Source: Phallusia mammillata
Lineage: Eukaryota
Reading direction: 5' to 3'
NCBI GenBank assembly: GCA_965637545.1
Contig: OZ281501.1
Location: 18,600,001 to 18,664,000 of the forward strand
Length of the DNA stretch: 64,000 nt
Shown here piece by piece: positions 1 through 18,591 of this stretch. A program made the translations under genes and the position numbers. The first letter of the stretch is position 1. Each line of letters opens with the position of its first letter. A model generated the notes under the pieces. The model saw only the letters and a program-made list of their open reading frames with translations. It made no database searches and had not been told where the DNA came from.

Positions 1-11
1 ATTGTATATAT

Positions 12-227
12 CAGTGGTTCTCAAACTTTTTTATTGTCGGTGCCAAATGGTATTTTTTAAGTGTGTAGGGAGCCGCAAAAAAATGAAACCTTGCGAAAAT
101 CACTAAAGAAGATGACTTTGAAAGCTAAAATAGCAATGTTTGGTGGTTTTCTGAGGTCTGGTGCGAGCCGCAAAATAAGTAGTTGGGAGCCGGGTGCGGC
201 CCCGAAAACCGAGTTTGAGAACCACTG
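12..227. mobile_element. hAT (Charlie/Buster-type) MITE
   Basis: Terminal inverted repeats CAGTGGTTCTCAAACT (12) and AGTTTGAGAACCACTG (ending 227); flanks GTATATAT / GTGTATAT form a 7/8 matching 8-bp TSD with central TA. Confidence 0.85.
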
Positions 228-1172
228 GTGTATATTGTTGTGTATAGTGTAACTTGCTTACATACCTTCAAAATGCAAAATTTTGTTCAATTGTACATGC
301 TTTTTCATTACTTCAGAGGTGTATTATAAAAAACTCCAAGTCAAAGCAAATGGTTTGAAACTAATCCAGAATGCACTTCAATGCAATATTGTGTTTAGTT
401 TGATTTGTTTTTGTGAATTTCCTAAATCAAAAAAAAGAGAAAAAAAAAGAAAACGACCTGACAATGATTTTAAAAATAGTATCCGGTGGTTGTGAGGTAA
501 ATTTGTCAAACTCGATCCCAAAAAGTTTATTTGAATGCAACTTGCATTATCTTTGTAAAACCTGCGGTATTTGTGATAAGTATGGTTAGATCTGTTGTGT
601 GGTGAAGCAGCAAACACTTGTAAAAGTTGAAGAGCAATCAGTGAGCTAAGTTTCAGATGAAGAGCTCTCGCACCAGTCACAAAACAATGCCACTTGAAAT
701 TTATTGCGGGTCTGTATCAGTTTTTCAACCCTTGAAATATCAAGCGGACCGACACAGTGCAAACATTGTAGTACAGAAGTGTAGAGAAACTTTCAAACTA
801 CTTGCAGAAGCCTTTTTGGGAATGTTTTTGTGACAGAACTGTACATTTGAATAAATAAAACCATTATGAGTTAGAGGTAGGTTATAAATTAACTTTTTTA
901 TGCAGCATCTACTTGCTAACCAAGGTTTAAGGATATATATGTAGTTTGGATAAAAATGACAGTGGCAGAAAAAACTGACTAAAACTGTTTAATGAAAGAT
1001 TTTGATCTAAACAATATACTAAAGGTATATCAGCAGATATGACAAGTTAGGTAAAAGATTTCTGCTTCTGGTAAATTTAGTTTTATATTCTTACATAAAG
1101 AATAATTGCTTCTGTAGTTTAGGATATGGTAAAAATTCCTGAGTGTTTGTTATTGATTTGAGGGTTGCGTAA

Positions 1173-4100
1173 ATGGCACCTTGTATACAACTGCATAGAT
1201 TTTTAGCTTTGCAAGACAAGGAAAGGACAAATATTTTTACATTTCTTGTTGAAAATCCACAAGAAATATCCAGTTTTGATGTTCGTTCAAGAGAATTTCA
1301 GTTTGCTGGCCACCGCTGGTATGTTTATACTGGAAAACCAAACAACGAATACTTCAGGTAAGATCTCTATACGCATGTAATATCTTACTGGTTACTAAAC
1401 ATTGGTTACATAAGTTTTGCTGTATGTATCATTTAAAAACTATTTGACCATGAAATTAAACAAATTTAATGTAGTACTTAATAACTGAGTTTTTGAAAAC
1501 GGGTTGATTGCACAAATGGTATTTAAAACAATTTTATTGATGTTTTATGTTATACATAAAGACTGTTCTTTGGCATTACCTAAATTGACTAATTTTGTAT
1601 TATGGTAAGACTTTCTTTTGCCACATCCACTAGTCAAATAGATGTTTTAATGATTTTAAAACCTGTTATGTTTCTAGCTTCTATTTGAGAATTGTAAACC
1701 TTGGCAAAGAAGTTCGTGTGACAACTGTGTATTCGTTCAATGTCGTGAATCTTGTGAACTACCAGAACAACTACACATATCACAGTCCTCCTGCTGGCAG
1801 GGTTTTCTCTCGAGATGATGACGCGTTGTCGTGGGGATGGAAAGAGTTCATCCGTAGAGAGGTAACACCACTAGGAGGCGCTGTTTATAAATCACACAAT
1901 TTTGTGGCTAAAACTTGGCCGAATGACCCTGGGCGCCTTACCCATGTACAGACACAAAAAACCTGATCGGGATTCATCCTGAGTCGAAACCCGAAAAAGT
2001 TCCTAAATAGCATAATGACCAAGACAAGTAACAAGAAACATACATTTTTTGATAGTATGGTTTGAGTACATATATTTTGGTTAGTTGCATTACAAAGTCT
2101 TGTTAAAAAATTGCAGAAATTGTGTTTATTATGCAGTGTTACAATTATTCGAAACAAAATTCTGTAAAAGGCATAAAATGTTTACACCAGCAACCATAAA
2201 TAATAATGTTTAACTTTGCATTTTTTATTAAATGCCAGAAAATTTGCTTTCAGACTCTGTTAAAACCAAATGGTGGGTTTCTATTTGATGGGAACAAGGT
2301 TTTGGTTGAGTTGGAATGTAAGTCTTATAAAACTGTATTTGAGGAACCGATTCAACTGCCAAAGATTACACAAGAAAACCCGTTTCCTATGATCCACACT
2401 TCCCCATTCAGTGTTGGTGGATTTGCATGGCAGGTGATTTAAATTTGCTAAAAAATGATTTAAAACCAACTAACTCAAATTTAAAACCAGCGTTCTTGCA
2501 CAAATAGAAGTGGAAACAAATCCACATAGAATCAAAGTTTTTATGTGATCAAATGTTATCAGTAAATTTTCCAAAACTGCTTGAAGCAAGGTTACATAGT
2601 CTGAGGTTTAGTTTAAGTGTGTCCAAGTTTTTCTATAATACAATTTCGTTTGGTGTTTTAAATATGTCTTTGGCATGCTGCTACTAAAGGGTATATATAT
2701 TTTACTGGGTTTTAAGGACAATTTTGGACAACAGGAGTTAAAGGTTTATCAAAAACGACTCCAACTGTAAATCAGACTCTGCAACCCTGGGTTAAAGTTT
2801 GCTAACAAACAAACCAAATTGGACAAATGAGGATTTTCTGGCTTTTGACATGACAAAATAATTTTTGTTTTAGATAAGAATATTTCCTGATGGGCCAGAT
2901 GAAGACAATAAAGGGAATGTTGCTTTATTTCTGCATTGCACAACATCAAATCATTTGGCAAAAGTCAAAGCAAGATTTCTGATTGAAGGACAGGTGAGTG
3001 GGTTAATGTAAAAATTAAATCTAAGCAAAATAAAATCCCCATTGAAGTCCCCTAATGGAATAGACTGTGTTCATAAATTTATGTTTTGTATTACATTAAA
3101 AGCCCTAGAAACGATCGCTTGTGTTTCAGTCAGTTATAAGACCCAAGTATAACAGACAAGTTTGTTCCATGACATGCCAGTTTATTACAGTGTTTTCTGA
3201 ATCTTTAATTTGTCAAGAAAATATTGTATTTGCTGCATATTCCCGTTATTTGCATTAAAAGCATGACAAGTTGCATATGCAAATAACCAGATTTGTCTTT
3301 ACAAATTCTTGTCCATATTTTTCAGCAATCACCTGCTGTGTATGAACATACTTTTCCTCCCAACAGCATCAGTGAAATGCCAAGTGGCGTCGCTTTCCCC
3401 AATAAAGGAGATTTCATGAATTCACTGAAGGAAAATAAACTGAGAGTGGGAATTGAATTCATGACAGTCATGGAGGTATTTAATGCTTTCCACAAGGTGT
3501 ATGAGAACAAAAATATTGTTAAAAGTTACAAAAACAAACTATAGAACTAAATTGTCTTTAAATTAGCATGAAACTATTTTGTATATTTGAAACCTTTTTT
3601 TAATTACTTTTTTTAGTTTAGTTACTTTTAAGGTCTGTGTCATGTGTTTCTAAGCTATTAACTCTTGTTAGGTAAACGAGGTCCATGTTACACTCTCAGA
3701 GCCCAACATGTACCCAACTGTTTGTGTAACTCCATTCGAAGACATCAACGGCTGTCCGTGGGTGCTGAAAACCCTACAAGCCACAAAACTTAAGTTAAAA
3801 ATGGATCAAAACGAGAAAACTACAAGTGGATTGATGGAATTTTACCACAGACACATTATGTGGAATGCTACACTTGTATCACCAGGATCAGAAGATGTTT
3901 CATTAAACGTTCCTCTCAACACCAAAGGGCCGTTGATTGGTTATTTTGGTGAAAACTGGTCGGACGCTGATGTTATAAAGTCAGATTTGGCTGTTGAAGA
4001 CCTTGCTGTCACTGACAACCCATACAGGACCGATGTAGATGACGGATATGACAGGTTTGTACTGTACTTGTTGTTTAACATACACTGTGCTTTCATAGTC

Positions 4101-7100
4101 AAGTATTGTGGGTTTGACAGAGTATAAGTTTGATTTGCTTGTCAACTTTTCAAAAGTGACTTTTTCCATATTTGGAGACCATTCTAATTGTTTTTCATGC
4201 AAAATTGTATAGATTTTTTCAATTAAAAAAGCGACACCCTCTTCTGCATGTAATCTAGCTTGCTTGTCAGGCCTTGATTAAAATTGTGACAACATTGCAA
4301 ATAAGTGTGGTTGAGAGCCGGATTAAACCCTTTACCGTCTCTAAGCACGAAGCCTAAATCCCCTTAAGTGTCAAATTCAGTGTAGGCTTATGTCTGGAGA
4401 TAAAACAGCTGGTTGATAATTACTTTGCCTAATTGGTAATCCAGCCCTTGTGTATGAACTTGCAGTACTCCAAGCATACTGTGGTCAAGAAGCATATGAA
4501 TTTAAAAAAATACTGTGAAGCATTAAGAGTCTCTAGTATAAAATGTATGTTGAACTTTTGCATGTATCTAGGTGTTGCAAGTGTACAAAGAGTTGTTTTT
4601 TTTAACAGGTATTCTTATGTGTCTATACATGTTGAAATTGTGTCGAACCACTTACTTTATAAAACACCAGCTCCATCTCCAACTGGTGACAGAGAAAGAA
4701 AGCTTCTTTACAATGCAAGGTAGAGAACAAATTCTAAAACATAGGGTTAAGTGAGCTCATATAGGTGGTACAACAATCTTATGTTGCAAGAAAGTTTAAA
4801 CCTTGTCTTTTTATTAAGTTTGTCATTGTTAAACGATTTTATCAAACAGCAAGAATATTAAAAAAATGGGTTATGGAAAAAAAGGGAATTATCCATTTAT
4901 TTAAAAAAAATTGTAAACATTGAAAAAAATGTAAGGTGAAGTACTGTAAACTGGTTTAAATTACTTTTAGAGTACAAAAATTGTGTTGTACATAAAAAGC
5001 AATAGTTCTGCTCATAATAAATTTTATAATTGGTTCACCTAATGCAGTGGTTCCCAAACTTTATCTACTCGCGTACCATTTTTTTGGTTCATGCAGCGTT
5101 CTCGTACCACCTACAATCATGTTAGAATTTAATGAATAAAAATGTTACTAAACTTTACTAACTAACTTTACCTTAGTAACTTTGGCCTTCAGTAACCAAA
5201 GTCTCGTAAATATTAAACAAAACTTAGTCAAACTTTTACCGCCCTCGCTACAGTGCTACTGTCAACACAACTAGTAGCTTATTACAAAAACTGACTTTAA
5301 GGACTTATTACGTCGTAATAACAGATTCATTACGTCATAATAAATCTATTTCGTCACAAAGAAACCTTGCTTAACAGTTCAATGCGGCAATACACCAATG
5401 AATTAGAATTTAGTAGGAAATATAGTGTGAAATTTCACGCTCTACGTAATTTGTGTGAATTAAAACTTGTGTGAAATAAAGATCGCTTTGTGTGAACTTA
5501 ATAAGTTGCTTGCGTACCACCTTGGAGACCTTCGCGTACCACTAGTGGTACGCGTACCATAGTTTGGGAACCACTGACCTAATGTAAAGGTGGTTGTCGA
5601 ATTTATGTCATTTTTACAATTAACCCCAGTTTTCTGACCATCGGCAATTCATGTAATTTACTTCCAGGAAGGACAGAGCCCACGTGCACAGCAAATATCA
5701 GGATCTTTTAAGACAAAAAGCAACTCTTGAAAATAAATGTGAAAATTTGACACGAGAAAGAACCAGATTAATTGGAAACGACGGCGACACAGATGCAGAT
5801 TCTCTGATTCAAATTGTCCCAGATTATTCAAAGTTCCTGTTTGATGTACTGAGCGATCTTGCATTGTGTGGAACAACAAAAGGTAGTGATTTAATGTGGA
5901 GGACCACTTGAAACTTGTAGTGAACAAATAAAGTACTTGAAAACAGCTGTTAACTTGTTACCGATCAATAACAGATACACTTCTCAACACTTTTATCGCT
6001 TGGGCAAATGTGAGAATTATTCAATAATAATAACTAGGTTCCAAATTAACAATTTTAAATTAAATTAAGGACAATTATTGTAAAATGTGGGCGGTTGAAT
6101 ACTAAAAATTTGTTTCTACTTGTTTTTTTTTTACTCATAGAAATTATGTCTGCCTGTGTCTTGTGTACAAACTAAGCCAAATTGTTACAAGTTATTCCAC
6201 TTTTTTCTGTGTACCTTAGCTTTAAAAGCTTTAACGTTTCATGTCGCACCATACCAATCAAACTTTACAAACAAAATTATATTTAAAGTAGCATAAAAGC
6301 TAACTAAGCCAAATGGTAACAACTTATTGTAATTTATAGGTAAAAGTGTTGAGAGCAGATCAGGCAGAGCTTTCCTGGTTAAACCTCAACCACCAGAAGC
6401 TGAACGGATGAGCCGGTTTTCAGCTTATAGAGAAAATTTCAGCCTGTAAGTAGTGAACCCCTAACAAGTGTATGCATGTACAGACACATCCTGCAATTTG
6501 CCCACTTTGTATGCAATTAACCAGATTATTTGATTAACTCAGTAGTTCCATACTGGGGAAGGGTTTTTAAACTTGAGGGGAGGAATTTACTTTAAATATG
6601 TATATCTGGTATGTAAATAAACACTCAAACTCTGGAAATATAACCTGTGAAGTGAAGTTGATAAAATAACCAACTTTATGGTTTAGTATCCACTATGTAG
6701 TATATTAGGGAGGAATGAAAATGTTTTCAATTGTTGAAAAATGTTCCACTGGATTGACTAAATGACTCGTAACATTTCATTACAGTTGGCTTTAACAATC
6801 TTTATGCAATTAAATGGATTATGTGATTAACCAGATATGTCTGTGTAATGTAGATTAGATATTTTTAACAAGATCCTGTTTTTTTAGGTTGGTTTCTGAT
6901 GCCAGACCTGACCCAGCAGAACTAGCAGCAACATGCAAACAAGTGGAAAATTTCAAAACTATTCTGATGCAATTTATTCAAGCCAAGACTGCTTTGAGAC
7001 TAACAGACATAATAACATCAGGTAAACAAGCACAATATGTGTGTTCTCAAAGTTTTTGAATAAGTTTGATTTGGTGCATTATCTATGGACAAATGTATTT

Positions 7101-8783
7101 TATAAATTAAAAATGTAAAAATGTAAAGTGCTAAATTCGTATCGAAGACATAAAATCAGGAAACAGCTACAAAAACCTCATGGTTAAAAATACACTAAAC
7201 TAATCCTAAAATTATGGACCTTCTTCTGCTAATTCTTCTTGCTTGATATTATGTGAACATTATAATTTCATCACCAGGTTCTTTGGGGACGAACACAACA
7301 TGTAGCAATCGTTGGGACGTTGATTTGGTTCTTCTGAGTGCCGACATTCCACGTAATGGTCATGCAACGTGGATGCCTTCGTTTATTGTGGCGTTGGCCA
7401 GAATGTTAGAGGAAGGAAGTTTAGATGGAAAACTTCCAGGGACATCAAACTTTACCTACACGTAAGATGGAAAAAAATCGTTATGGTCAAGCTTGTAATT
7501 TAAAATGTAATTTATATCCTGCTGGTTATTTCAATTATTTTTTTTACAGGACATACAGTGTGCAATTTGACTTTAAAAGCAAGGTTGAAATAGATTTGTA
7601 TCCTGTGTATGACTGGCCCAATGAGGAAGGTTATGAAGCATTGTATGATGAGTTGCTACGGCAACGTACATCTGAGAATCTGTCGTGGTTTTGTCCTGCA
7701 GCTGCAGAAAGACAAAAAACATTCATTGAGGAACAGCCAGACCAGGTATATGACCTTTTTGGCATTTTGCATGAGTTATGACAAGGCATATTGTAGTGGT
7801 CATAATGCCAGTAAATACGGAAATATTTGTGTCTATGATAAGTTAAAAATCGACATGTATGCCTTTGCCAAGATTTTGTTTCAAAATAAAAATGTTGCTA
7901 AATATATACTGCTCTAAATAAGTGAACTAAATCTAGTATATTAGTTTTTAAGCATTTCCTCATTGTAATACTTTTGTCTTGTATCTTATGATATTTATTT
8001 CAGGTTAAAGACTTGATGAAGGTGATTAAATTTTGGAGGAATTCTGCCGATTGGAACGAGAAGCGTTGGAGGCCATCTTCATATTTGCTTTGTTTGCTTC
8101 TAATCCGTGCATATGAAAATGCTTGTCATGTTATCGAGGGCAGTTTGCCCAGCAATCGAACGGTTCTGAAATGCTTTGTAAAACTTGTTCTGTCCACTGG
8201 AAATGCCAGGTAACATGTTGAATCTGCATGTTTTTCTAGTTCTCATTTACAATGTTATTTACTCGACATGACCCTACAATGGCAGGCCTATTGTTTTGTC
8301 AAGGATTACTGAGATAGGAAGTAGAAATATCTCTGCATTGAATGTCCACATTTATTGCACTTTTTAATTCCCTTTATATAAACTTATTGCATTTTAACCC
8401 AATGCTTAAGTAGAAAAAAAATGTGCATTTGTCCAAAATTGTTGCCCACCTGCGTTTAGAACTTTAGATGGTCTTTGCAAATATCTCATGTTTTACTAGT
8501 TTTTAAACTATAAAAACTAATTGACATTGCTTGTTGCAGACCTGCACCAATGAGAATCTCATGGGCTCGCTTTTATGATCCAAAAGATTACAATATTGAG
8601 TACAGTAGTAGTTCGAACACTGAGTGCCCACCAATTGTGCAAGACCCAGCTAATCCCGCAAACAATGTAGCAGAGAGACCAGTGTCATGGCTACCATTCA
8701 GACAACTGCTTGAAACTTGGGCACATGCACTGGGCATGATGGAAGAAGGAACATTACTACCTATTGAATCCAGTCGACGTTAA
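1173..8783 (+). CDS. MATH(x3)-coiled coil-OAS-like nucleotidyltransferase fusion protein, ~865 aa, 14 exons
   Basis: Exons 1173-1357, 1678-1861, 2254-2433, 2874-2993, 3326-3475 (alternative in-frame donor at 3496), 3672-4054, 4609-4719, 5668-5882, 6340-6445, 6888-7021, 7278-7461, 7550-7745, 8004-8209, 8540-8783; all GT-AG and phase-consistent, 2598 nt in total. MATH signatures: FQFAGHRWYVY..YFSFYLRIV..FNVVN..SWGWKEFIRRE..GGFLFDGNKVLVELEC; SPFSVGGFAWQIRIFPDG..GNVALFL; a degenerate third copy (TPFEDINGCPWVL..YVSIHVEIV). OAS signatures: IITSGSLGTNT..DVDLVLL, VEIDLYPVYD, QKTFIEEQPDQVKDLMKVIKFW, PSSYLLCLL, IVQDPANPANNVA. Confidence 0.88.
5045..5576. mobile_element. hAT (Charlie/Buster-type) MITE in intron 7 of the MATH-OAS gene
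   Basis: TIRs CAGTGGTTCCCAAACT / AGTTTGGGAACCACTG; perfect 8-bp TSD ACCTAATG on both sides; subterminal CGCGTACCA repeats. Confidence 0.92.
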
Positions 8784-9157
8784 TTTGGGGAAAACTTTTT
8801 GATATAACATGTCTTCCACAAAGCATTTGCAATTTCTTTACCATTGAATTTTGTGACGTTAAATATTTTAGCTCGATGAATACTGCTTCCAACAACACTG
8901 TTTATATTGTTGTCACCAATTTAATAAATGCTTTTTTTCACTATTTGTGTGCAATTGTTTTCGTGTTTGTGAAATAAATGGGCATCAAAGTATTGAATGC
9001 ATTGAGTGCAGAAAACATTACTGTGTGTTTATTGGTGGTTTGATATTATTTTTGTTTTGTTTAGTTAAATGCAAATTAAAAATACTTGTTTATGTATTAT
9101 GTACACATTTACAGCTGATATCAATACATATCTAAGAAAAGTTGATTTGTGTTTTAG

Positions 9158-12064
9158 CTGACATGTGAAAACCATGATGACGGAGCAACCCCAGCAATTA
9201 TTCAGTGCAACGAATGTGGGAACTTGTGTTCAGAGTGTGATAGATACCTTCACTTGCATCGCAGAACACGATCGCATCAAAGACAGGTTTGGCTGATGTT
9301 ATTTGACTTTACTCACTAAAACTATGAGCAATGGCAACATGGTTATGACTTCACTCAAAAGAATTGTGTCATTTTTGTTTTCGTTGGTAATTTCCTGTCA
9401 CAAAGCTTGTTGTGTGCATGCAAGCCTGCCAAGCATATTCTGTATTTGTTGTAATCAAGAGAATTGACTTGGCAGATATTTAAAGAAGAAGAGGAGGCAA
9501 TTAGAGTGGATTTACATGAAGGCTGTGGAAGGATTAAGCTGTTTTGGTTTAAAGCTTTGGCAGATTCCAACACCTTAAAGGCAATGGTGGAATTTAAAGG
9601 CAGATCTACAGGTTTCTACAAATATAAACAACTAAACAAGTTTATCATGTGACATGCAGCTACCAGTTTCAATGCTTAATGTTGAAGGAATTAAAACATG
9701 ACATAATATCAAGAATGCTTGATAGCCTGATATTGTGGCTTGCATTTGAAGCAATTGCTCATAATTTAATTATAGAGGCAAATGGAATGTTTAGATGCTG
9801 TTTCTTAATCCACTAAGTTGTTGTGTTTCAGGTCAAATGCAACTGGTTGCAACCGATGCTTGTAGATTTTGTGGAAATGCATGTGACAACACTCAGTTGG
9901 TTTTAAGCAATGTCTGCAGTGATAAATCATGCCAGAAATATGCTACAGCTGTAAGTTTTGTAATGTTTGTACACTGAGCACACTAAAGTACGTAGAGAAC
10001 ACTAAATAATATGAAATGACCCTTGACAAACAACACATAAAATAAGGTTGAATGCCTTTCCTGGATTTTCACATTCCTCACTGGGGAAGAATACCTTACA
10101 GTCCTGGTACCAATACCAGCTAAAAAACAATGTTATAATTATTTTTTTGTTATGAAACAGGTTTGTGCAAAAACACACCCTTGTGGTCACCTCTGCGGTG
10201 GAGTCAAGGACGAAGAGACTTGTCTATTATGTCTTTACTCATCCTGTAATCCAGGATTGAATCAGGATGCTGACGATATGTGTATGGTTTGTTTTACCGA
10301 TGCATTGTCGGCTGCACCTGCAATTCAGGTAGGTCAAATTTAAAATTTTATTAATTATAAATATTCATTTCAGAGCAAAATTAGCCTATTGCAAAGGTTC
10401 TATCTCTTTCTCTAATTTACCCTTGGGCAGACTTTGAAGCAATTTTCTTTGAGTTCATTAACTTAACTAATCCAGCTTACTTTTTGGCTTATTGATATTT
10501 ACCACATCAAACTTTTCCTCAAGCATTATAATGTACCCTTTGTTAAGAATTACTGGGACCAACCCTAAAGTAGTGAAGTAGTCCAAAGTGTTATCACACC
10601 CATTTCATCAATCTCGGTGTTCTCCCACTTCAAATTCCACTGTAGACTTTTCAAACCCATTTACACACATAAAAGTTTGGATACCAACATAATTTGATAT
10701 CATGACCCTTACTGGCATGGCATAATCTATCAAACCTCTATTTTTGACACTTTTAAAATGTAAATGAACAAAAAAAATGATTTGAAATGCTTGCTTTTTT
10801 GCAGTTAAAATGTGGACACATATTCCATCATCACTGCTGCCAAACTCAGCTCCAGAAACAATGGGCTGGACCAAGAATCACGTTTGGCTTTCTACTTTGT
10901 TCTATTTGTAAGGTATGTGATTAAATTTCTAGAATGCTGTTCAACAAGTAAAAATTGTGCAGTATGCATGTAGACAATTTAAATTTATTCATGATAAAAA
11001 AATAGGTGAATGTCCTAATTAAATGTTTAAAAAGTTATGTTTGCGTACAAGTATTCGTTTGATATTCTTTGTGTAAAAATTCTAGAAAGAGTTTGACCAA
11101 ACCTTTTTTTAAGCAGGTGCAGTTGAAAAACAAATTAAGAACTTTGGAAAAGGATAAACAATATAATCTGATTGTTCTATTTGATTTTTTTTAGAATGAA
11201 ATTAGCCATCCTGCATTGGAGAGTGTTTTAAAACCATTACGAGAACTCATGCAAGAAGTTAAACGAAAAGCATTGCAAAGACTGGAGTATGAAGGTCTTA
11301 AAGAATGTGAATCAATTACCACTGTTGGAGGAAAATTCTACAAGGATCCAACAGGATTTGCTTTGAATAAATATGCTTACTACATGTGTTGCAACTGCAA
11401 TAAGGTATAAGGCTGATAAATGTGTATTTTAAAGGAAAGAAGTGATAATTATTCATGTTTATTAGGCCTATTATGGTGGAGAAGTAAGGTGTGATGCTGA
11501 AGCCGATGGAAATTTGTTTGATCCAAAAGAGCTAATTTGTGGTGCTTGCTCCGATGTATCCTGTGCGCAAATATGCCCTAAGCATGGGACAGACTTTTTG
11601 GAATATAAGGTAAAACAGTTATCCACTATTTTGGCTCAAGAGCATTTTTGGAAATTCGTATTTCAACTTCGTAAAAATATCTGTTTACCCATTTTGTTGG
11701 AGTCAAAAATTTTGAAACAAGTTTTTTAGGTTGCAAAGGTAAAGTATATGTTTTATATGGAACTTAAAAACAATTTTTTGAACCATATACAATGTTTTAA
11801 TCTATGTTGGTGTACTTTCAGTGCCGATATTGCTGCTCCGTAGCTGTATATTTTTGCTTTGGCACAACCCACTTCTGCCAACCTTGTCATGATGACTTCC
11901 AAAGGATAACTGGACTGCCCAAAAATGAACTACCACATTGTCCAGCTGGACACAAGGCAAGGCAGTTGGAAGGCAAAGAGTGTCCACTGCATGTTCAGCA
12001 TCCACCGACCGGGGAAGAATTTGCTTTAGGTTGTGGTGTTTGTCGAAATGCCCACACCTTTTGA
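9158..12064 (+). CDS. MYCBP2: MYCBP2/Highwire/RPM-1-like C-terminal module (B-box-like, RING-H2, tandem-cysteine RCR E3 domain), ~418 aa, 5' end not found
   Basis: Exons 9158-9286, 9476-9611, 9832-9950, 10161-10328, 10805-10912, 11195-11404, 11466-11609, 11822-12064; phases consistent. Translation [118 protein letters not shown] matches the human MYCBP2 C-terminus as I recall it. It begins at a splice acceptor with no in-frame ATG. Confidence 0.93.
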
Positions 12065-15497: not shown

Positions 15498-16267
15498 TGT
15501 TATTGCACTAAAAAACTTACTGGATTTTGCTATTATTGCATTTTATAATTTTATATATTATTGCAAAATCAAAATTTTCCTAAATCTAATCATATGCCTT
15601 AATCAAAGTAATTTACATTTTTATTGAACGTGTTTATTTCAGTGCTTTACAATACGACTTTATCATCAAATTTAGTAATTTTAGGCGTAAAGTGAATGTA
15701 TTTTCCAACATTAACCACTGTTTAACTTTTCTCACTACTTTGAAGTGGCTTTGGTGTCATGTCCTTTTTAGTGGTGCAGTCTTTTTCAGATAGCTCGAAC
15801 CTATCAGAAATAATAGCAGTTGTAGTGTGAAATAGTTGAGTTTTTGTATCACTCACCTTATTTAAGCTACGAAAAATCTGTCGAAACAAAAGGTGGGTGA
15901 AAAATGCGGATCTTTCATTGTCCCGTGGCGGACCTTTTAGGTCAACACGAATTGCTTTTGCGAACCTGTTATTTCAATGCAATTCAGTTTCGTGATAACC
16001 TTCTATCAGTTGGTAGTGGATCGTGTTATAATTGTAATCGGATAACGGGTTTGGTCTGGCCAAAATCGACCGCGAAACATTGAAAATTGAGAATTCAGAA
16101 GCAATTGCCGACCGTATCCGCCTCGCGGTCATGTTTTCGTGGCTTTGATCAATCGACAGTAACATAAATTTGGTGGGAAACTGCTCTGTTGCAATTTGTA
16201 AAGTAAAAAAAATCCCTCGGGGCCAAATACTGGTGTGAAAACGCAAGCAGAAGTTGAAAACAGAAAG

Positions 16268-18591
16268 ATGTTGCTACAAATAGTTCTAGTTACTATCGTT
16301 GTTAGATTTGCACAAGGTATTGTTCTTGTTGTGGTTTTCTTTAAATAAAACATTAAACGTTCCTAAATTATAGGCTTGGAATGTTGGCAATGTTCGGCGA
16401 ATAGCTTCAAGGAATGTCAGAAAACTGGAAAGTTGGTAACTTGCAGCTCAAGTGAGGTTCGAAATAATATTGTGTTTTCTATTGCTAAAAATCGTGAACG
16501 TTGTATTCCCTGACGAGGTTGTATTCACTACTCACAGGACGTTTGTTCAACAGTGGTTCGAAGATATTTTGTGGTTCATAGAATTTGGAAACAATGTAAA
16601 CAGAAACAATCGTGTTCAAGTGATCGTGAACAAGTAAGTGAAAAGTTTGTGCCACATTTTTGCCAAAAATGCTTGATTGAAACCCAGTGTTTAAGAATTG
16701 GGACAAATTTGGTGGTGGAAACAACCAGTGCAATGAGAACTTTCGTTCATCAGTTTGCACTTGCTGTTGCGAAAAGGATTCTTGCAACGTCAATGAAATG
16801 TGTAAAGGTAATGTGTACATTGGGTTGTCAATTGCGAAGTTTCTATGCCTTAAACTTTTTTGAATTTTAGCCAAGATAACATCAAACACTTGCAGCGCTG
16901 TTCGACCCAATTTCAAACATGGAAGGATGTTTTGCACGAATGGAAACAAAGTTGGATCAAAATATTTGTTCAGTTGTACTGATTCCGGCTTCTATCTCAA
17001 TCCGGCGGGTCATTCAACATCTCAATGTATGGGAAACGGGGAATGGACGCTCAAACCACCTTGTTGCTCAAGTTCGTATTACAGGACACTTAAACTTATT
17101 TATACAAAACTGTCACCATCTTGTTATCCTACATGCAATATGAACCTGCAGTTTACAGGTGCTTTAACCTTGTAACCTGGAAATTTTACCAACCATTGGT
17201 TAAAATAGCACGCATATGTTCATTTAAAACGTTTTTAAAAAGATGTACTTGATGCTTTTGTGTCACTCTCAAGATACAATTCAATGTACCCTTTATGCAG
17301 CCAACTTGCATTGATGCAAGATTTTACAAATAGCATAACTATACTGTTTTCATGTACAACAGAACAATGTCCACCGTATATTCCTTTTGACTTGGTCTGG
17401 GTTTACACCAGAAAAAGCAGAGAGAAGTTTGGATTGATCCGACGGACACTAAGGCAAAGTTTTAGGCGGTAAGAGCCAAGTCTAATCTATCCCGTGGTGG
17501 TATTCGAACCCACTAATAAAAACTAACTAGGTTCACCCGACATATATCAGTTTTGAAATGTTTACAGACTGCGACAAGAAAAGGAAAATCTTCGTGTGGG
17601 AAGAATCGTTTACAGTGATGTTGTTCACGAGGAAATCAGTTTCAATCTAAGAGCTGATTGGCAGAGCATTAGCCTTGAATATATTCGGGCCCAACTTGAT
17701 TTTTTGCCAGGTTTAAACTCCAGTTGCTGAAGCATTGATCCTCAAACATTTTTCTCATTTTCTAAACTAACAAATTATTTATTTTCACCAGACTCGGAAA
17801 TTGTCAACACGGGCGCCGCGCTTAAATATATCAAAGAAACCTTTTTTGCGAAAGATCACTGGAATTTGTCCCACGCCGACGTTGTCATAGTAACCACCGA
17901 CTCCGATTCCGACGATGACGTAACAAAAGTTGCAAAATCACTGAGAGATGACGGAGTTTTGGTGGGTTGAACTGAAGATAAATGTCCACGTAATATAAGT
18001 TAAAAGTTTCATGATAAGTGGACAGCTTCATATTGCACTATCAGTCGATCAGTTCTCAACAAAACATCCACTCAACTTTTACCATAAGACGGGGCACGAT
18101 CAACAGAAAAATCTGCTTGGCGGTACATTTATAGCTCTTGCAATCAAAAATTCGGCACTGAAATGTTTCTATGGTGCCCTCTTTTACATCTGTGACCAAA
18201 GTTCGTATCTACCAGTTAATCCAGCCCTTGATGTATTGAGGACTATCAACTTAACACTTTATATGCGATTGTTTGTAGCTAACAAAAGGTTAACACGTGC
18301 TTTCCTTACCTACTGGTTAATCCAACTACAAAACACAATGGATACGATTAACTATTGGTTGATATTATGCGATTGTATGTATCTAAGAGAAAGTGAATAT
18401 GATGATATATGTTTCAGGTGTATTCGGTGTTTCTGAAAACCAGCGAGAACAAACCCAACATGCAGGAGTTACTTGATATTGCTGGAGAGGAGGACCACGT
18501 GTTTATTGCTGATGAAAATGTAGAAGGGATTGGCGATCGAATAGCGGATGAGCTGATCGGCCATCTTTGCCAAAACCTTTGTGATGAATAG
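16268..18591 (+). CDS. Secreted Ly6/three-finger-Sushi(CCP)-VWA protein, copy 1, ~377 aa
   Basis: Exons 16268-16316 (signal peptide MLLQIVLVTIVVRFAQG), 16374-16456, 16538-16633, 16696-16807 (LECWQC..C..KQCKQKQSC..QC..VCTCCCEKDSCN), 16871-17071 (Sushi, ..GEWTLKPPCC), 17363-17468, 17568-17710, 17792-17961, 18418-18591 (VWA: PFDLVWV..RVGRIVYS..NTGAALKY..VIVTTDSDSDDDV..VYSVFL..LLDIA). Phase-consistent. Confidence 0.85.

What the first reader, a model, noticed from the sequence alone, without database searches (positions are those of the whole stretch)
1173..8783. Single gene fusing three MATH/TRAF-like domains and a coiled coil to an OAS-type nucleotidyltransferase
Seen in sequence: 14 GT-AG exons join in frame into one ~865-aa ORF with the order MATH-MATH-MATH(degenerate)-coiled coil (KYQDLLRQKATLENKCENLTRERTRL)-OAS. 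Established knowledge: OAS/cGAS-family enzymes make oligonucleotide second messengers in antiviral immunity; vertebrate OAS are OAS repeats or OAS-ubiquitin-like (OASL), and MATH domains are the peptide-binding modules of TRAFs, SPOP and USP7. I do not know of a described MATH-OAS architecture. Inference: this may be an invertebrate-chordate sensor/enzyme in which MATH domains, oligomerised by the coiled coil, recruit or activate the NTase through protein ligands rather than, or in addition to, dsRNA.
Basis: partly seen in the sequence, partly recalled or inferred. Interest (0 to 1): 0.9.

Follow-up and report, generated by a model that had tools for sequence, protein, structure and literature searches.

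The report
Sea-squirt MATH–zipper–OAS fusion gene
A sea-squirt gene really does join peptide-binding MATH domains and a leucine zipper to an apparently active OAS antiviral enzyme, a conserved and transcribed but so far undescribed layout that hints at an OAS controlled by protein partners rather than by double-stranded RNA.

Summary
Fourteen GT-AG exons (window 1173-8783, + strand) give one 865-aa ORF. RNA contigs from three runs (two studies) show every junction from exon 2 to exon 12, and single contigs run from the third domain into the OAS core. Full-length colinear orthologues exist: Ciona intestinalis XP_078489267.1 ("uncharacterized protein", 866 aa, 80% identical), a marine metatranscriptome mRNA (886 aa, 62%) and genomic contigs of a third species.

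Domains 1 and 2 are MATH domains by Pfam and by fold. Domain 1 keeps the SPOP-type peptide groove. Domain 3 has no sequence match, but a low-confidence model matches USP7, SPOP and TRAF MATH domains best, so it is probably MATH. After the invariant motif YKTPAPSP comes a five-heptad leucine zipper. The C-terminus is a complete OAS domain with the catalytic residues G-S, D-x-D and D intact. Part of its basic dsRNA-binding helix has turned acidic.

More distant relatives from marine metagenomes have lost the catalytic residues. The gene is nested inside an intron of a giant MYCBP2-like gene. It is not part of an operon.

No paper in the searchable library describes this architecture. Function is inferred only: a zipper-oligomerised, MATH-docked nucleotide-signal synthase. 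The scan has no note of this architecture elsewhere in this genome.

The parts
1173..8783 (+). Whole coding span of the MATH-zipper-OAS gene (14 exons, 865 codons plus stop)
   Evidence: Exon joining and translation. RNA joints. Colinear orthologues P0013 and P0018.
1173..1357 (+). Exon 1: start codon and N-terminal half of MATH1
   Evidence: ATG preceded by an in-frame TAA, GT donor. The N-terminus MAPCIQLHRF is identical in P0013 and P0018. Not covered by the laid reads.
1678..1861 (+). Exon 2: C-terminal half of MATH1
   Evidence: Pfam MATH_2 E 0.008 on this exon alone. Joint to exon 3 seen in run X2.
2254..2433 (+). Exon 3: last strand of MATH1 and start of MATH2
   Evidence: Joints on both sides in RNA contigs.
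2874..2993 (+). Exon 4: MATH2 core
   Evidence: Pfam MATH_2 E 0.008. RNA joints.
3326..3475 (+). Exon 5: end of MATH2
   Evidence: RNA joints 2990/3323 and 3473/3670.
3672..4054 (+). Exon 6: most of the third (MATH-like) domain
   Evidence: RNA joints. This exon is split by an extra intron in C. intestinalis and in locus L007.
4609..4719 (+). Exon 7: last strand of domain 3 and the YKTPAPSP motif
   Evidence: RNA joints 4050/4605 and 4717/5666.
5668..5882 (+). Exon 8: leucine zipper and start of the linker
   Evidence: RNA joints in X1, X2 and X5.
6340..6445 (+). Exon 9: variable linker
   Evidence: RNA joints in X1, X2 and X5.
6888..7021 (+). Exon 10: first helix of the OAS N-lobe
   Evidence: RNA joints. 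Aligns to OAS1 and OAS2 in the profile search.
7278..7461 (+). Exon 11: NTase core carrying G-S and D-x-D
   Evidence: RNA joints. Alignment A10 and the PDB profile hits.
7550..7745 (+). Exon 12: third catalytic Asp and acceptor-site helix
   Evidence: Joint 7461/7550 in three runs. Alignment.
8004..8209 (+). Exon 13: OAS1_C core
   Evidence: Pfam OAS1_C at 18.9 bits on this exon alone, against a cut-off of 19.9. Orthologues are colinear.
8540..8783 (+). Exon 14: end of the OAS domain (DPANPANNV) and the stop codon
   Evidence: Translation. Orthologues end at the same place.
1173..2322 (+). MATH1 (aa 1-146, introns included)
   Evidence: Pfam MATH_2 and MATH above their cut-offs in the orthologues. 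Confident AF2 beta-sandwich in this region (pLDDT about 70-88). The full-length model matches the USP7 TRAF-like domain at TM 0.8. That search does not say which MATH domain aligned.
1829..1849 (+). SWGWKEF strand of MATH1 (aa 113-119)
   Evidence: Aligns with SPOP DWGFKKF, residues 130-136. Invariant in all family members.
2323..3475 (+). MATH2 (aa 147-273, introns included)
   Evidence: Second MATH_2 stretch in P0013 and P0018. The profile hits only SPOP MATH in the PDB, E 0.02. AF2 pLDDT 70-85.
3672..4666 (+). Third conserved domain, probably a degenerate MATH (aa 274-420)
   Evidence: No Pfam or PDB sequence hit. The low-confidence model gives best structural matches to USP7, SPOP and TRAF MATH domains, Z 6.6-4.5. 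The three top language-model clusters shown carry MATH families. 93% identical to C. intestinalis.
4658..4681 (+). YKTPAPSP motif (aa 418-425)
   Evidence: Invariant in every clade of the family. Function unknown.
5669..5776 (+). Leucine zipper, about five heptads (aa 439-474)
   Evidence: The d positions read V/I/L-L-L/F-L-L in the same register in three species; 2-6% of shuffles do as well. The P0013 model has one long helix here, residues 425-478, pLDDT about 80.
5777..6897 (+). Variable linker (aa 475-548, introns included)
   Evidence: 29-56% identity to the orthologues and pN 0.30. AF2 pLDDT is mostly below 50 here.
6898..8780 (+). OAS nucleotidyltransferase domain, both lobes (aa 549-865, introns included)
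   Evidence: Family profile against PDB sequences: OAS2 7e-33, and OAS1 3e-22 over OAS1 residues 30-326. Foldseek top hits are OAS1. Pfam OAS1_C at 54-64 bits in the orthologues.
7278..7291 (+). G590-S591 of the NTase signature (SGSLGT; its first codons lie at 7018-7021 in exon 10)
   Evidence: Aligns with the G-S of the OAS1 motif GGSSGKG.
7316..7324 (+). Catalytic D603-V-D605
   Evidence: Aligns with OAS1 D-A-D. Kept in L007, P0013 and P0018. Lost in P0008, P0012 and P0015.
7593..7595 (+). Third catalytic acid, D666
   Evidence: Aligns with the Asp of OAS1 EFDV.
7689..8036 (+). Acceptor-site and RNA-binding helix segment (aa 698-727, spans intron 12)
   Evidence: Aligned with pig OAS1 residues 185-205: T187 to P, T190 to A, Q193 kept, R194 to K, R198 to E, R200 to Q, K203 to Q. 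Pig numbering is taken from PMC6307210.
8923..8928 (+). AATAAA, probable poly(A) signal
   Evidence: Pattern search. The lengths of RNA contigs X1 record 5 and X2 record 16 place the transcript end about 110-150 nt after the stop.

Best explanation
**What is shown.** This is one transcribed ascidian gene, nested in an intron of a giant MYCBP2-like gene. It encodes an 865-aa protein with no signal peptide. Its parts, in order:
- two genuine MATH domains, the first keeping the aromatic peptide-binding groove of SPOP;
- a third, very strongly conserved beta-rich domain that is probably also MATH-like;
- the invariant motif YKTPAPSP;
- a five-heptad leucine zipper;
- a fast-evolving linker;
- a complete OAS-family nucleotidyltransferase with all catalytic residues.

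**What is inferred.**
- The zipper makes dimers or trimers, so the MATH domains form a multivalent array that docks on short linear motifs of partner proteins, host or viral.
- This docking localises, concentrates or allosterically switches on the OAS domain.
- The OAS domain then polymerises ATP (or other NTPs) into 2'-5' or mixed-linkage oligonucleotide signals for cell-autonomous defence.
- Activation by dsRNA in the manner of mammalian OAS1 is doubtful, because part of the basic RNA-binding helix is acidic and the domain has a net negative charge.
For: **One gene.**
- The RNA joints, and contigs spanning exon 6 into the OAS core, are.
- Colinear orthologues are P0013, XP_078489267.1/P0018 and loci L006-L009.

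**MATH1 and MATH2.**
- Pfam MATH_2 scores 66-72 bits with two stretches, and MATH scores 31 bits, in the orthologues.
- Foldseek matches the USP7 TRAF-like domain at TM 0.8 and rmsd 1.7-1.9 A, and SPOP MATH at TM 0.7-0.79.
- In the alignment to SPOP, Y87, F102, Y123, W131, F133 and K134 correspond to Y64, Y80, F105, W114, W116 and K117. Five of these (all but Y64) are invariant across the family.

**Third domain.**
- VIA-align gives Z 6.6/6.5 to USP7 MATH, 5.0/4.8 to SPOP and 4.5 to TRAF1/3/6. The best unrelated fold among them is at Z 5.0, and the remaining unrelated folds are at 3.5 or below.
- The three top language-model clusters shown carry MATH families.

**Zipper.** Heptad analysis and a long helix in the model.

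**OAS domain.**
- The family profile hits only OAS proteins strongly (7e-33 to 4e-6), over both lobes.
- Foldseek top hits are OAS1.
- G-S, D-x-D and D are intact in the window and in three orthologues.

**Constraint.** Synonymous sites are saturated (pS 0.75-0.95), while pN is 0.05-0.23 in all folded domains.

**Doubt about dsRNA.**
- Pig R198, R200 and K203 correspond to E, Q and Q.
- Net charge is -10 for the N-lobe and +4 for the C-lobe.
- PMC6307210 infers that early-branching OAS enzymes act without dsRNA.
Against: - No biochemical or expression-under-challenge data exist. Every functional step is inference.
- The OAS N-lobe is the fastest-evolving folded part (63% identity against 92-93% for MATH1 and the third domain).
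- More distant family members have lost the D-x-D (P0008, P0012) or both G-S and D-x-D (P0015). The family can therefore live without catalysis, and the conserved function may sit in the MATH part.
- The basic residue equivalent to human R195 is kept (K707), so RNA binding is not excluded.
- The third-domain model has low confidence: pLDDT 61 for the best model, 35-39 for the other four.
- The oligomeric state of the zipper is unknown. Its a positions are largely polar.
- The domain assignments by Pfam and by structure were made on orthologues at 62-80% identity. The spliced window protein itself could not be submitted whole to the tools.
Confidence: 0.55

Rival explanations
1. OASL-like scaffold. 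The OAS domain acts mainly as a non-catalytic binding module for RNA or protein. The conserved MATH-zipper array is the real business end: a TRAF- or SPOP-like adaptor that assembles signalling or ubiquitin-ligase complexes. Catalysis would be dispensable or vestigial.
For: - Distant family members have lost catalytic residues while keeping the whole architecture (P0008 D.Q, P0012 N.Q, P0015 GG and D.T).
- MATH1 and the third domain are far more conserved than the OAS lobes.
- Vertebrate OASL is a precedent for an inactive OAS domain fused to a protein-interaction module (4xq7 is among the hits).
Against: In the ascidian clade (the window, C. intestinalis, L007, P0013) G-S, D-x-D and the third Asp are all retained, although the N-lobe is only 46-63% identical. 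Retention against that much change argues for selection on catalysis.
Confidence: 0.2
2. Canonical sensor with a new output. The OAS domain senses nucleic acid as in OAS1. The MATH-zipper part is the downstream arm that recruits effectors, or it is a substrate-recruiting arm as in USP7. It would not be the sensor.
For: - The domain is homologous to OAS1 and OAS2 over both lobes.
- The equivalent of human R195 is still basic, and K718 is kept.
- In USP7 a MATH domain sits N-terminal to a catalytic domain and brings partners to it (top structural match).
Against: - Several basic residues of the OAS1 RNA-binding helix are replaced by E or Q, and the domain is net acidic.
- No known 2-5A receptor (RNase L) is described outside vertebrates. 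This is my own knowledge and was not tested here.
Confidence: 0.2
3. Annotation artefact. Two neighbouring genes, a MATH protein and an OAS, were wrongly merged. Alternatively, the main product is an OAS-only isoform from an internal promoter, as the older Ciona model XP_026691711.1 (370 aa) suggests.
For: - The older RefSeq model is OAS-only.
- Run X5 shows no depth on exons 2-6. This could reflect 3' bias, low coverage or a shorter isoform.
Against: - Spliced RNA contigs bridge exons 6 through 11 and beyond in X2, and exons 7 through 12 in X1 and X5.
- The 370-aa model starts inside the exon-8 equivalent, so it is a 5'-truncated model.
- A complete mRNA contig encodes the full fusion (P0013/L003).
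- The newer RefSeq model is full length.
- Intron-free ORFs in metagenome contigs encode the same order of domains.
Confidence: 0.03

Closest known systems
Vertebrate OAS1/OAS2/OAS3 (2'-5'-oligoadenylate synthetases)
   Same: - The C-terminal 317 aa are homologous over both lobes: profile E 7e-33 to OAS2 and 3e-22 to pig OAS1 residues 30-326.
- OAS1 is the top Foldseek hit.
- The catalytic G-S, D-x-D and D residues and the DPA(N/D)P motif are present.
   Different: - A roughly 550-aa N-terminal extension (MATH domains, zipper, linker) is absent from all described OAS proteins.
- Several basic residues of the dsRNA-binding helix are replaced by E or Q.
- The equivalents of pig T187 and T190, proposed determinants of 2'-specificity in PMC6307210, are P and A, as that paper reports for sponge enzymes that also make 3'-5' links.
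OASL (OAS-like domain plus two ubiquitin-like domains)
   Same: An OAS-fold domain fused to a protein-interaction module. Some family members here (P0008, P0012, P0015) have lost catalytic residues, as OASL has.
   Different: The partner module here is N-terminal MATH domains plus a zipper, not C-terminal ubiquitin-like repeats. The window protein keeps the catalytic residues.
SPOP, USP7 and TRAF MATH domains
   Same: - MATH1 and MATH2 have the MATH beta-sandwich (Pfam above cut-off in the orthologues; TM 0.7-0.8).
- MATH1 keeps the SPOP groove residues.
- As in USP7, MATH lies N-terminal to an enzyme domain. As in TRAFs, MATH is combined with a coiled coil.
   Different: - There is no BTB, USP, RING or TRAF zinc-finger domain.
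- The coil follows the MATH domains instead of preceding them.
- There are three tandem copies.
- The fused enzyme is a nucleotidyltransferase.
Stand-alone multi-MATH (plus coil) proteins of arthropods and flatworms (e.g. AFDB B7PSE9, H2KSD0; ESM Atlas MATH clusters)
   Same: The N-terminal 340-530 residues of the model superpose on these proteins. The MATH array plus coil may therefore be an older module.
   Different: They lack the OAS domain. Relatedness was judged by predicted fold only.
Bacterial CBASS type III CdnC with HORMA and TRIP13
   Same: A CD-NTase of the same clade as OAS (CdnC appears among the hits). In that system activity is switched on by a peptide-binding partner protein rather than by nucleic acid. 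This is a working analogy for the proposed mechanism.
   Different: The peptide sensor there is a separate HORMA protein, not fused MATH domains. The analogy is functional only, and nothing here tests it.
AlphaFold DB cluster A0A6P8HGE7 (812 aa, unnamed) and the amphioxus-type 'trichohyalin-like' coil-OAS proteins A0A6P4ZUN8 and A0A6P4ZQT8
   Same: A0A6P8HGE7 aligns with the model from residue 4 to 860 (E 8e-33), so it appears to have the same overall architecture. The A0A6P4Z entries match residues 416-866, the coil plus OAS part.
   Different: Identity is only 18-27%. The tool does not show the organism or the sequences, so their domain content could not be checked by sequence.

Membership tests
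OAS family (2'-5'-oligoadenylate synthetase, CD-NTase clade C relatives) | OAS1_C domain (Pfam PF10421) above the gathering score | tested here: met
   Orthologues P0018 64.1 bits, P0013 54.5 bits and P0008 44.7 bits, against a cut-off of 19.9. Window exon 13 alone scores 18.9 bits, just under the cut-off because it is a 68-aa fragment. The spliced window protein could not be submitted whole.
OAS family (2'-5'-oligoadenylate synthetase, CD-NTase clade C relatives) | Homology to both lobes of solved OAS structures | tested here: met
   The profile that includes window exons 10-14 (A10) gives OAS2 7e-33, pig OAS1 3e-22 (residues 30-326), human OAS1 9e-18, OASL 1.5e-15 and OAS3 4e-6. No Mab21 or cGAS chain is listed. 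Foldseek top hits are OAS1, 1e-9.
OAS family (2'-5'-oligoadenylate synthetase, CD-NTase clade C relatives) | NTase catalytic signature G-S ... D-x-D ... D | tested here: met
   G590-S591, D603-V-D605 and D666 align with the OAS1 motifs GGSSGKG, DAD and EFDV.
OAS family (2'-5'-oligoadenylate synthetase, CD-NTase clade C relatives) | Basic dsRNA-binding surface and dsRNA-dependent activation | tested here: inconclusive
   Pig R194 (human R195) corresponds to K707, so that basic residue is kept. Pig R198 (human K199) corresponds to E711, R200 to Q713 and K203 to Q716. The OAS domain has a net charge of -6. Only one helix was examined. Binding itself cannot be tested with these tools.
OAS family (2'-5'-oligoadenylate synthetase, CD-NTase clade C relatives) | Synthesis of 2'-5'-linked oligoadenylates | not testable with these tools
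   Needs an enzyme assay.
MATH/TRAF-like domain superfamily | Pfam MATH_2 (PF22486) or MATH (PF00917) above the gathering score | tested here: met
   P0018: MATH_2 71.8 bits with two stretches (cut-off 32) and MATH 31.3 bits (cut-off 21.2). P0013: MATH_2 66.1 bits. Window exons 2 and 4 alone each give E 0.008.
MATH/TRAF-like domain superfamily | Eight-stranded beta-sandwich superposable on USP7, SPOP and TRAF MATH domains | tested here: met
   Model of P0013 (62% identical): USP7 TRAF-like domain at TM 0.79-0.81 and rmsd 1.7-1.9 A over about 131 residues; SPOP at TM 0.70-0.79.
MATH/TRAF-like domain superfamily | Peptide-binding groove residues (SPOP Y87, F102, Y123, W131, F133, K134) | tested here: met
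   In MATH1 these align with Y64, Y80, F105, W114, W116 and K117. Five of the six (all but Y64) are invariant in the family. The role of these SPOP residues is from my own knowledge of the SPOP literature. MATH2 lacks the WGF-type strand.
MATH/TRAF-like domain superfamily | Third domain (aa 274-420) is also a MATH domain | tested here: inconclusive
   Against: no Pfam hit; no PDB sequence hit; hhalign against MATH2 gives E 0.33; Foldseek finds nothing significant. For: seven of the nine best VIA-align matches are USP7, SPOP or TRAF MATH domains, and an eighth is Siah1 (Z 6.6-4.1, up to 124 of 137 residues aligned), on a model of pLDDT 61; the three top language-model clusters shown carry MATH families, scores 0.83-0.86.
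TRAF proteins proper | N-terminal RING and TRAF zinc fingers, then a coiled coil, then a C-terminal MATH domain | tested here: not met
   No RING or zf-TRAF hit in P0013 or P0018. Here the MATH domains are N-terminal and the coil follows them.
OASL | C-terminal tandem ubiquitin-like domains | tested here: not met
   The protein ends about 30 residues after the OAS domain, and there is no ubiquitin-family Pfam hit.
cGAS-like receptors (Mab21 superfamily) | Mab-21 domain (PF03281) | tested here: not met
   No Mab-21 hit in Pfam scans of P0008, P0013 or P0018. The strong solved-structure hits are all OAS proteins, and no Mab21 or cGAS chain is listed.

The most novel reading that the evidence does not exclude
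The MATH array is the sensor and the OAS domain is the output. Binding of a short peptide motif, viral or from a damaged host protein, to zipper-clustered MATH domains switches on an OAS that needs no dsRNA. This would give a protein-triggered oligonucleotide second-messenger pathway in a chordate lineage that, as far as I know, lacks interferon and RNase L, so it would imply an unknown downstream receptor. The invariant YKTPAPSP motif, which fits the USP7-type P-x-x-S MATH ligand pattern, could act as a built-in pseudo-ligand that keeps the enzyme off.
Probability: 0.15. Interest if true: 0.8.

Novelty: new variant of a known kind. Interest (0 to 1): 0.58.

Why it matters
- **A different control logic for OAS.** OAS enzymes are textbook dsRNA sensors. 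The accessory modules described so far are extra OAS repeats or ubiquitin-like domains. An expressed, conserved chordate OAS fused to a multivalent peptide-binding array suggests regulation by protein partners. In eukaryotes that logic is known for bacterial CBASS relatives but not for OAS.
- **A tractable model.** Ciona can be electroporated and edited with CRISPR. It sits at the base of the vertebrate lineage and has no described 2-5A receptor, so the gene gives a direct handle on what OAS products do outside the interferon/RNase L system.
- **A natural comparison set.** The repeated loss of catalytic residues in more distant family members offers natural enzyme and pseudo-enzyme versions to compare.
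- **An annotation correction.** The widely used Ciona "OAS2-like" protein (370 aa) is a 5'-truncated model. Papers that modelled the Ciona OAS as a stand-alone enzyme (e.g. PMC6307210) probably used such a truncated model and so missed more than half of the protein.

Tried and rejected
- **Single-exon searches.** Pfam on single exons gave only sub-threshold hits. phmmer of exon 13 against PDB sequences found nothing. Both are fragment effects, overcome by using orthologues and profiles.
- **Whole-protein alignments with exon fragments.** Several exons were misplaced (A1, A5). I rebuilt the alignments domain by domain or without exons 8-9.
- **Internal repeats.** BLASTP among the three N-terminal domains shows no similarity. 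hhalign between their small profiles is not significant.
- **Third domain.** There was no Pfam hit. The profile search against the PDB gave only a spurious acidic match to SEM1. AF2 in the full-length run gave pLDDT below 50. Foldseek on the domain-only model found nothing significant. Only the alignment-based VIA search pointed to MATH.
- **Paralogues in the window.** None found.
- **The search for related loci.** A three-sequence alignment worked.
- **dN/dS against C. intestinalis.** Synonymous sites are saturated, so only pN per domain is reported.
- **ESM Atlas.** The search by features with P0008 gave only weak OAS leads and no MATH+OAS cluster of 50 or more members.
- **Two-gene operon with the downstream RCR E3 module.** Rejected. 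In C. intestinalis those exons are annotated as the 3' end of a 4,724-aa gene that encloses the MATH-OAS gene.
- **The window protein itself.** I could not submit the spliced window protein to the search and folding tools, which accept references only. All whole-protein tests were therefore run on orthologues at 62-80% identity or on profiles containing the window's exons.

Full report
**1. The observation**

Reading the + strand of window 1-9200 in three frames gave stop-free blocks that join through canonical splice sites. After adjusting boundaries by one base where needed, 14 exons with GT donors and AG acceptors give a 2,598-nt CDS of 865 codons plus a stop. It starts at the ATG at 1173, which has an in-frame TAA immediately upstream, and ends at 8783. 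No paralogue lies elsewhere in the window.

**2. Transcript evidence**

Ten runs labelled as probable RNA, from three studies of the same organism, hold part of the 3600-8800 stretch. The best hold 0.28-0.34 of the sampled words, which matches the exonic fraction.

Contigs of three of these runs, plus one DNA-like run, were laid on 1650-7649.
- The RNA runs have no depth in the introns except over repeats. The DNA-like run is flat at about 300x.
- GT..AG joints sit exactly at the predicted boundaries for introns 2 through 11.
- One 1,791-nt contig (X2, record 16) runs from exon 6 through exon 11 and continues for about 790 nt. That equals exons 12-14 plus about 150 nt of 3' UTR, ending near the AATAAA at 8923.
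- Contigs of X1 (1,470 nt) and X5 (842 nt) bridge exons 7 through 11 and 7 through 12.
- The DNA run shows none of the joints, so there is no processed copy.

The MATH half and the OAS half are therefore on one spliced transcript. The exon 1-2, 12-13 and 13-14 junctions lay outside the single 6-kb lay that was allowed. They rest on orthologues and on contig lengths.

**3. Orthologues**

phmmer with exon 6 against 1.8 billion cluster representatives found only 11 proteins. The family is small, and in that library this lineage appears only as short exon-sized pieces. Follow-up searches recovered the following.
- **P0013** is an 886-aa ORF on a 2,948-nt marine metatranscriptome contig. It is 62% identical and colinear with my model from MAPCIQLHRF to the C-terminus.
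- **P0018** is RefSeq XP_078489267.1, "uncharacterized protein LOC113474517 [Ciona intestinalis]", 866 aa. It is 80% identical end to end. I rebuilt its CDS exactly from the genome as 15 GT-AG exons. The one extra intron splits the equivalent of window exon 6.
- **XP_026691711.1** is the older C. intestinalis model, "2'-5'-oligoadenylate synthase 2-like", 370 aa. It is the 3' part of the same gene and starts inside the exon-8 equivalent.
- **L006-L009** are four metagenome contigs of a third species (GC 44%). They carry the same exons in the same order on one strand.
- **P0008, P0012, P0009 and P0006** form a more distant clade, 31-33% identical overall (about 40% in the MATH domains). They are encoded as long intron-free ORFs on compact eukaryotic contigs from marine metagenomes and have the same domain order.

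The window therefore comes from an ascidian close to, but not identical with, C. intestinalis.

**4. The N-terminal domains**

- **Pfam.** P0018 scores MATH_2 71.8 bits (two stretches) and MATH 31.3 bits. P0013 scores MATH_2 66.1 bits.
- **Structure.** An AlphaFold2 model of P0013, built on the family alignment that includes the window's exons, has two confident beta-sandwiches at residues 1-125 and 138-273. Foldseek places the USP7 TRAF-like domain (TM 0.79-0.81, rmsd 1.7-1.9 A) and SPOP MATH (TM 0.70-0.79) directly after OAS1.
- **Peptide groove of MATH1.** The MATH1 profile aligns with SPOP so that Y87, F102, Y123, W131, G132, F133 and K134 correspond to Y64, Y80, F105, W114, G115, W116 and K117. 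All of these except Y64 are invariant across the family. From my own knowledge these are the SPOP substrate-groove residues. MATH1 very probably binds a linear peptide. MATH2 lacks this strand.
- **Third domain (aa 274-420).**
  - It has no Pfam or PDB sequence match, and hhalign to MATH2 gives only E 0.33.
  - It was unmodelled in the full-length run. A domain-only run gave one model at pLDDT 61 and four at 35-39.
  - Foldseek on that model was blank.
  - An exhaustive VIA-align comparison with 48,161 PDB chains ranked USP7 MATH first (Z 6.6 and 6.5, 124-125 residues aligned), then SPOP (5.0, 4.8), TRAF3, TRAF1 and TRAF6 (4.5) and Siah1 (4.1). One unrelated protein, AvrL567-A, also reaches Z 5.0. 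The remaining unrelated folds start at 3.5.
  - The language-model feature search gave MATH clusters as its best hits, at 0.83-0.86, below the 0.9 level at which such hits are more than leads.
  - I rate "third MATH" as probable, about 0.7-0.75, but not shown.
  - Whatever its fold, it matters to the protein. It is 93% identical between the two Ciona-like species, the same as MATH1 (92%) and well above the OAS N-lobe (63%).

**5. Hinge and zipper**

The motif YKTPAPSP (aa 418-425) is invariant in all clades. It is followed by about 36 residues free of Pro and Gly. Their d positions read V/I/L-L-L/F-L-L in the same register in three species. The model shows one long helix there at pLDDT about 80. 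The a positions are largely polar, so the oligomeric state cannot be predicted. The following 70-residue linker is poorly conserved (29-56% identity, pN 0.30).

**6. The OAS domain**

- **Homology.** A profile of the family's C-terminal region, including window exons 10-14 (A10), hits OAS2 (7e-33), pig and human OAS1 (3e-22 and 9e-18, over residues 30-326), OASL, OAS3 and, weakly, bacterial CdnC. It hits no Mab21-type chain.
- **Catalytic residues.** G590-S591, D603-V-D605 and D666 align with the OAS1 motifs GGSSGKG, DAD and EFDV. They are kept in the window, C. intestinalis, L007 and P0013. They are replaced in P0008 (D.Q), P0012 (N.Q) and P0015 (GG and D.T).
- **Acceptor-site and RNA-binding helix.** Pig numbering comes from PMC6307210.
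  - T187 corresponds to P and T190 to A. That paper links these two residues to strict 2'-specificity.
  - Q193 is kept.
  - R194 (human R195) corresponds to K.
  - R198 (human K199) corresponds to E, R200 to Q and K203 to Q.
- **Charge.** The N-lobe has a net charge of -10 and the C-lobe +4.
- **Reading.** The domain looks catalytically competent. OAS1-style dsRNA activation and strict 2'-5' specificity are both open.

**7. Constraint**

Against C. intestinalis, synonymous sites are saturated (pS 0.75-0.95). Non-synonymous differences per domain are:

| Domain | pN |
|---|---|
| Third domain | 0.054 |
| MATH1 | 0.059 |
| MATH2 | 0.099 |
| OAS C-lobe | 0.123 |
| Zipper | 0.128 |
| OAS N-lobe | 0.228 |
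| Linker | 0.30 |

All folded parts are under purifying selection, and the NTase N-lobe is the fastest of them. Whether that reflects an arms race or relaxed constraint cannot be decided at this divergence.

**8. Genomic context**

In C. intestinalis the MATH-OAS gene lies inside a 4,724-aa gene on the same strand (L011 10001-17501). They match the terminal exons of that giant gene at L011 18212-21996 with 71-89% identity. The block at 9158 begins at a splice acceptor and has no start codon.

The MATH-OAS gene is therefore nested in a late intron of the MYCBP2/PHR-like gene, and the arrangement is conserved between two species. It is not an operon, and the E3 module is not an orphan. Intron 7 and the region upstream of the gene carry MITE-like elements with the terminal inverted repeat CAGTGGTTC(T/C)CAAACT.

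**9. How it most likely works**

Shown: one protein with a peptide-binding-competent MATH1, MATH2, a third conserved domain, a zipper and a catalytically intact OAS.

Inferred: the zipper oligomerises the protein. The MATH array docks on linear motifs of partner proteins. Docking or clustering then places or activates the OAS domain, which makes oligonucleotide signals.

Rivals:
- An OASL-like scaffold in which catalysis is secondary. It is favoured by the catalytic losses in the distant clade and by the higher conservation of the MATH part.
- A canonical nucleic-acid sensor whose MATH arm is the output.

The two-gene artefact is essentially excluded.

**10. Comparison and novelty**

Seven full-text searches found no paper describing MATH fused to OAS. 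The 2018 survey of OAS evolution modelled the Ciona OAS only as an OAS domain. The 2023 survey of eukaryotic CD-NTases discusses domain shuffling for STING, not for OAS.

The architecture is nevertheless already present in public databases without a name.
- RefSeq XP_078489267.1.
- AlphaFold DB cluster representative A0A6P8HGE7 (812 aa), which aligns with the model from residue 4 to 860 at E 8e-33. The tool does not show its organism.
- Amphioxus-type entries named "trichohyalin-like", which match the coil plus OAS part.
- Stand-alone multi-MATH proteins of arthropods and flatworms, which match the N-terminal part.

I class it as a new variant of a known kind: an OAS family member with an undescribed MATH-zipper regulatory or adaptor arm. 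It is real, expressed and conserved, and its function is entirely untested.

Noticed in passing
window 9158-12061 (+), compared with L011 18212-21996: The RING and tandem-cysteine (MYCBP2-type RCR) coding blocks downstream of the OAS gene start at a splice acceptor without a start codon. They match the terminal exons of a 4,724-aa C. intestinalis gene that encloses the MATH-OAS gene on the same strand. The MATH-OAS gene is therefore nested in an intron of the giant PHR/MYCBP2-like gene. The 'orphan E3 module' and 'two-gene operon' readings are probably wrong.
   Followed up: partly
window 5-234 and 5045-5576: Two MITE-like elements with terminal inverted repeats CAGTGGTTC(T/C)CAAACT. One lies upstream of the gene and one in intron 7. 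The DNA-like run shows 100-400 times the single-copy depth over 5050-5650, and RNA contigs also cover it.
   Followed up: partly
window 1850-2049 (intron 2) and 6450-6850 (intron 9): Further high-copy segments: depth about 16,000-17,500 against about 300 single-copy in the DNA-like run. They are probably SINE or other interspersed repeats and were not classified.
   Followed up: no
window 3672-4054, compared with L011 12317-12473 and 12945-13170, and L007 5335-5613 and 6107-6286: The window's exon 6 is split by an extra intron in C. intestinalis and in the third species. This is an intron loss in the window's lineage or a gain in the others.
   Followed up: partly
L001 2906-5857 and L002 9446-13519: The distant homologues are intron-free ORFs in compact, gene-dense marine eukaryotic contigs of GC 37-39%. 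In L001 the ORF starts at 2906, upstream of the called start at 3071. Both have lost the D-x-D motif. The organism is unknown. A compact-genome tunicate such as an appendicularian is my guess only.
   Followed up: partly
P0014 / XP_026691711.1 compared with P0018 / XP_078489267.1: The public Ciona intestinalis 'OAS2-like' protein of 370 aa is a 5'-truncated model of the 866-aa MATH-OAS gene. Studies that treated the Ciona OAS as a stand-alone OAS may have relied on such a truncated model.
   Followed up: yes
run X5: Run X5 shows no contig depth on exons 2-6 but 7-8x on exons 8-12. This could be 3' bias, low coverage or a shorter isoform. It cannot be decided from contigs.
   Followed up: no
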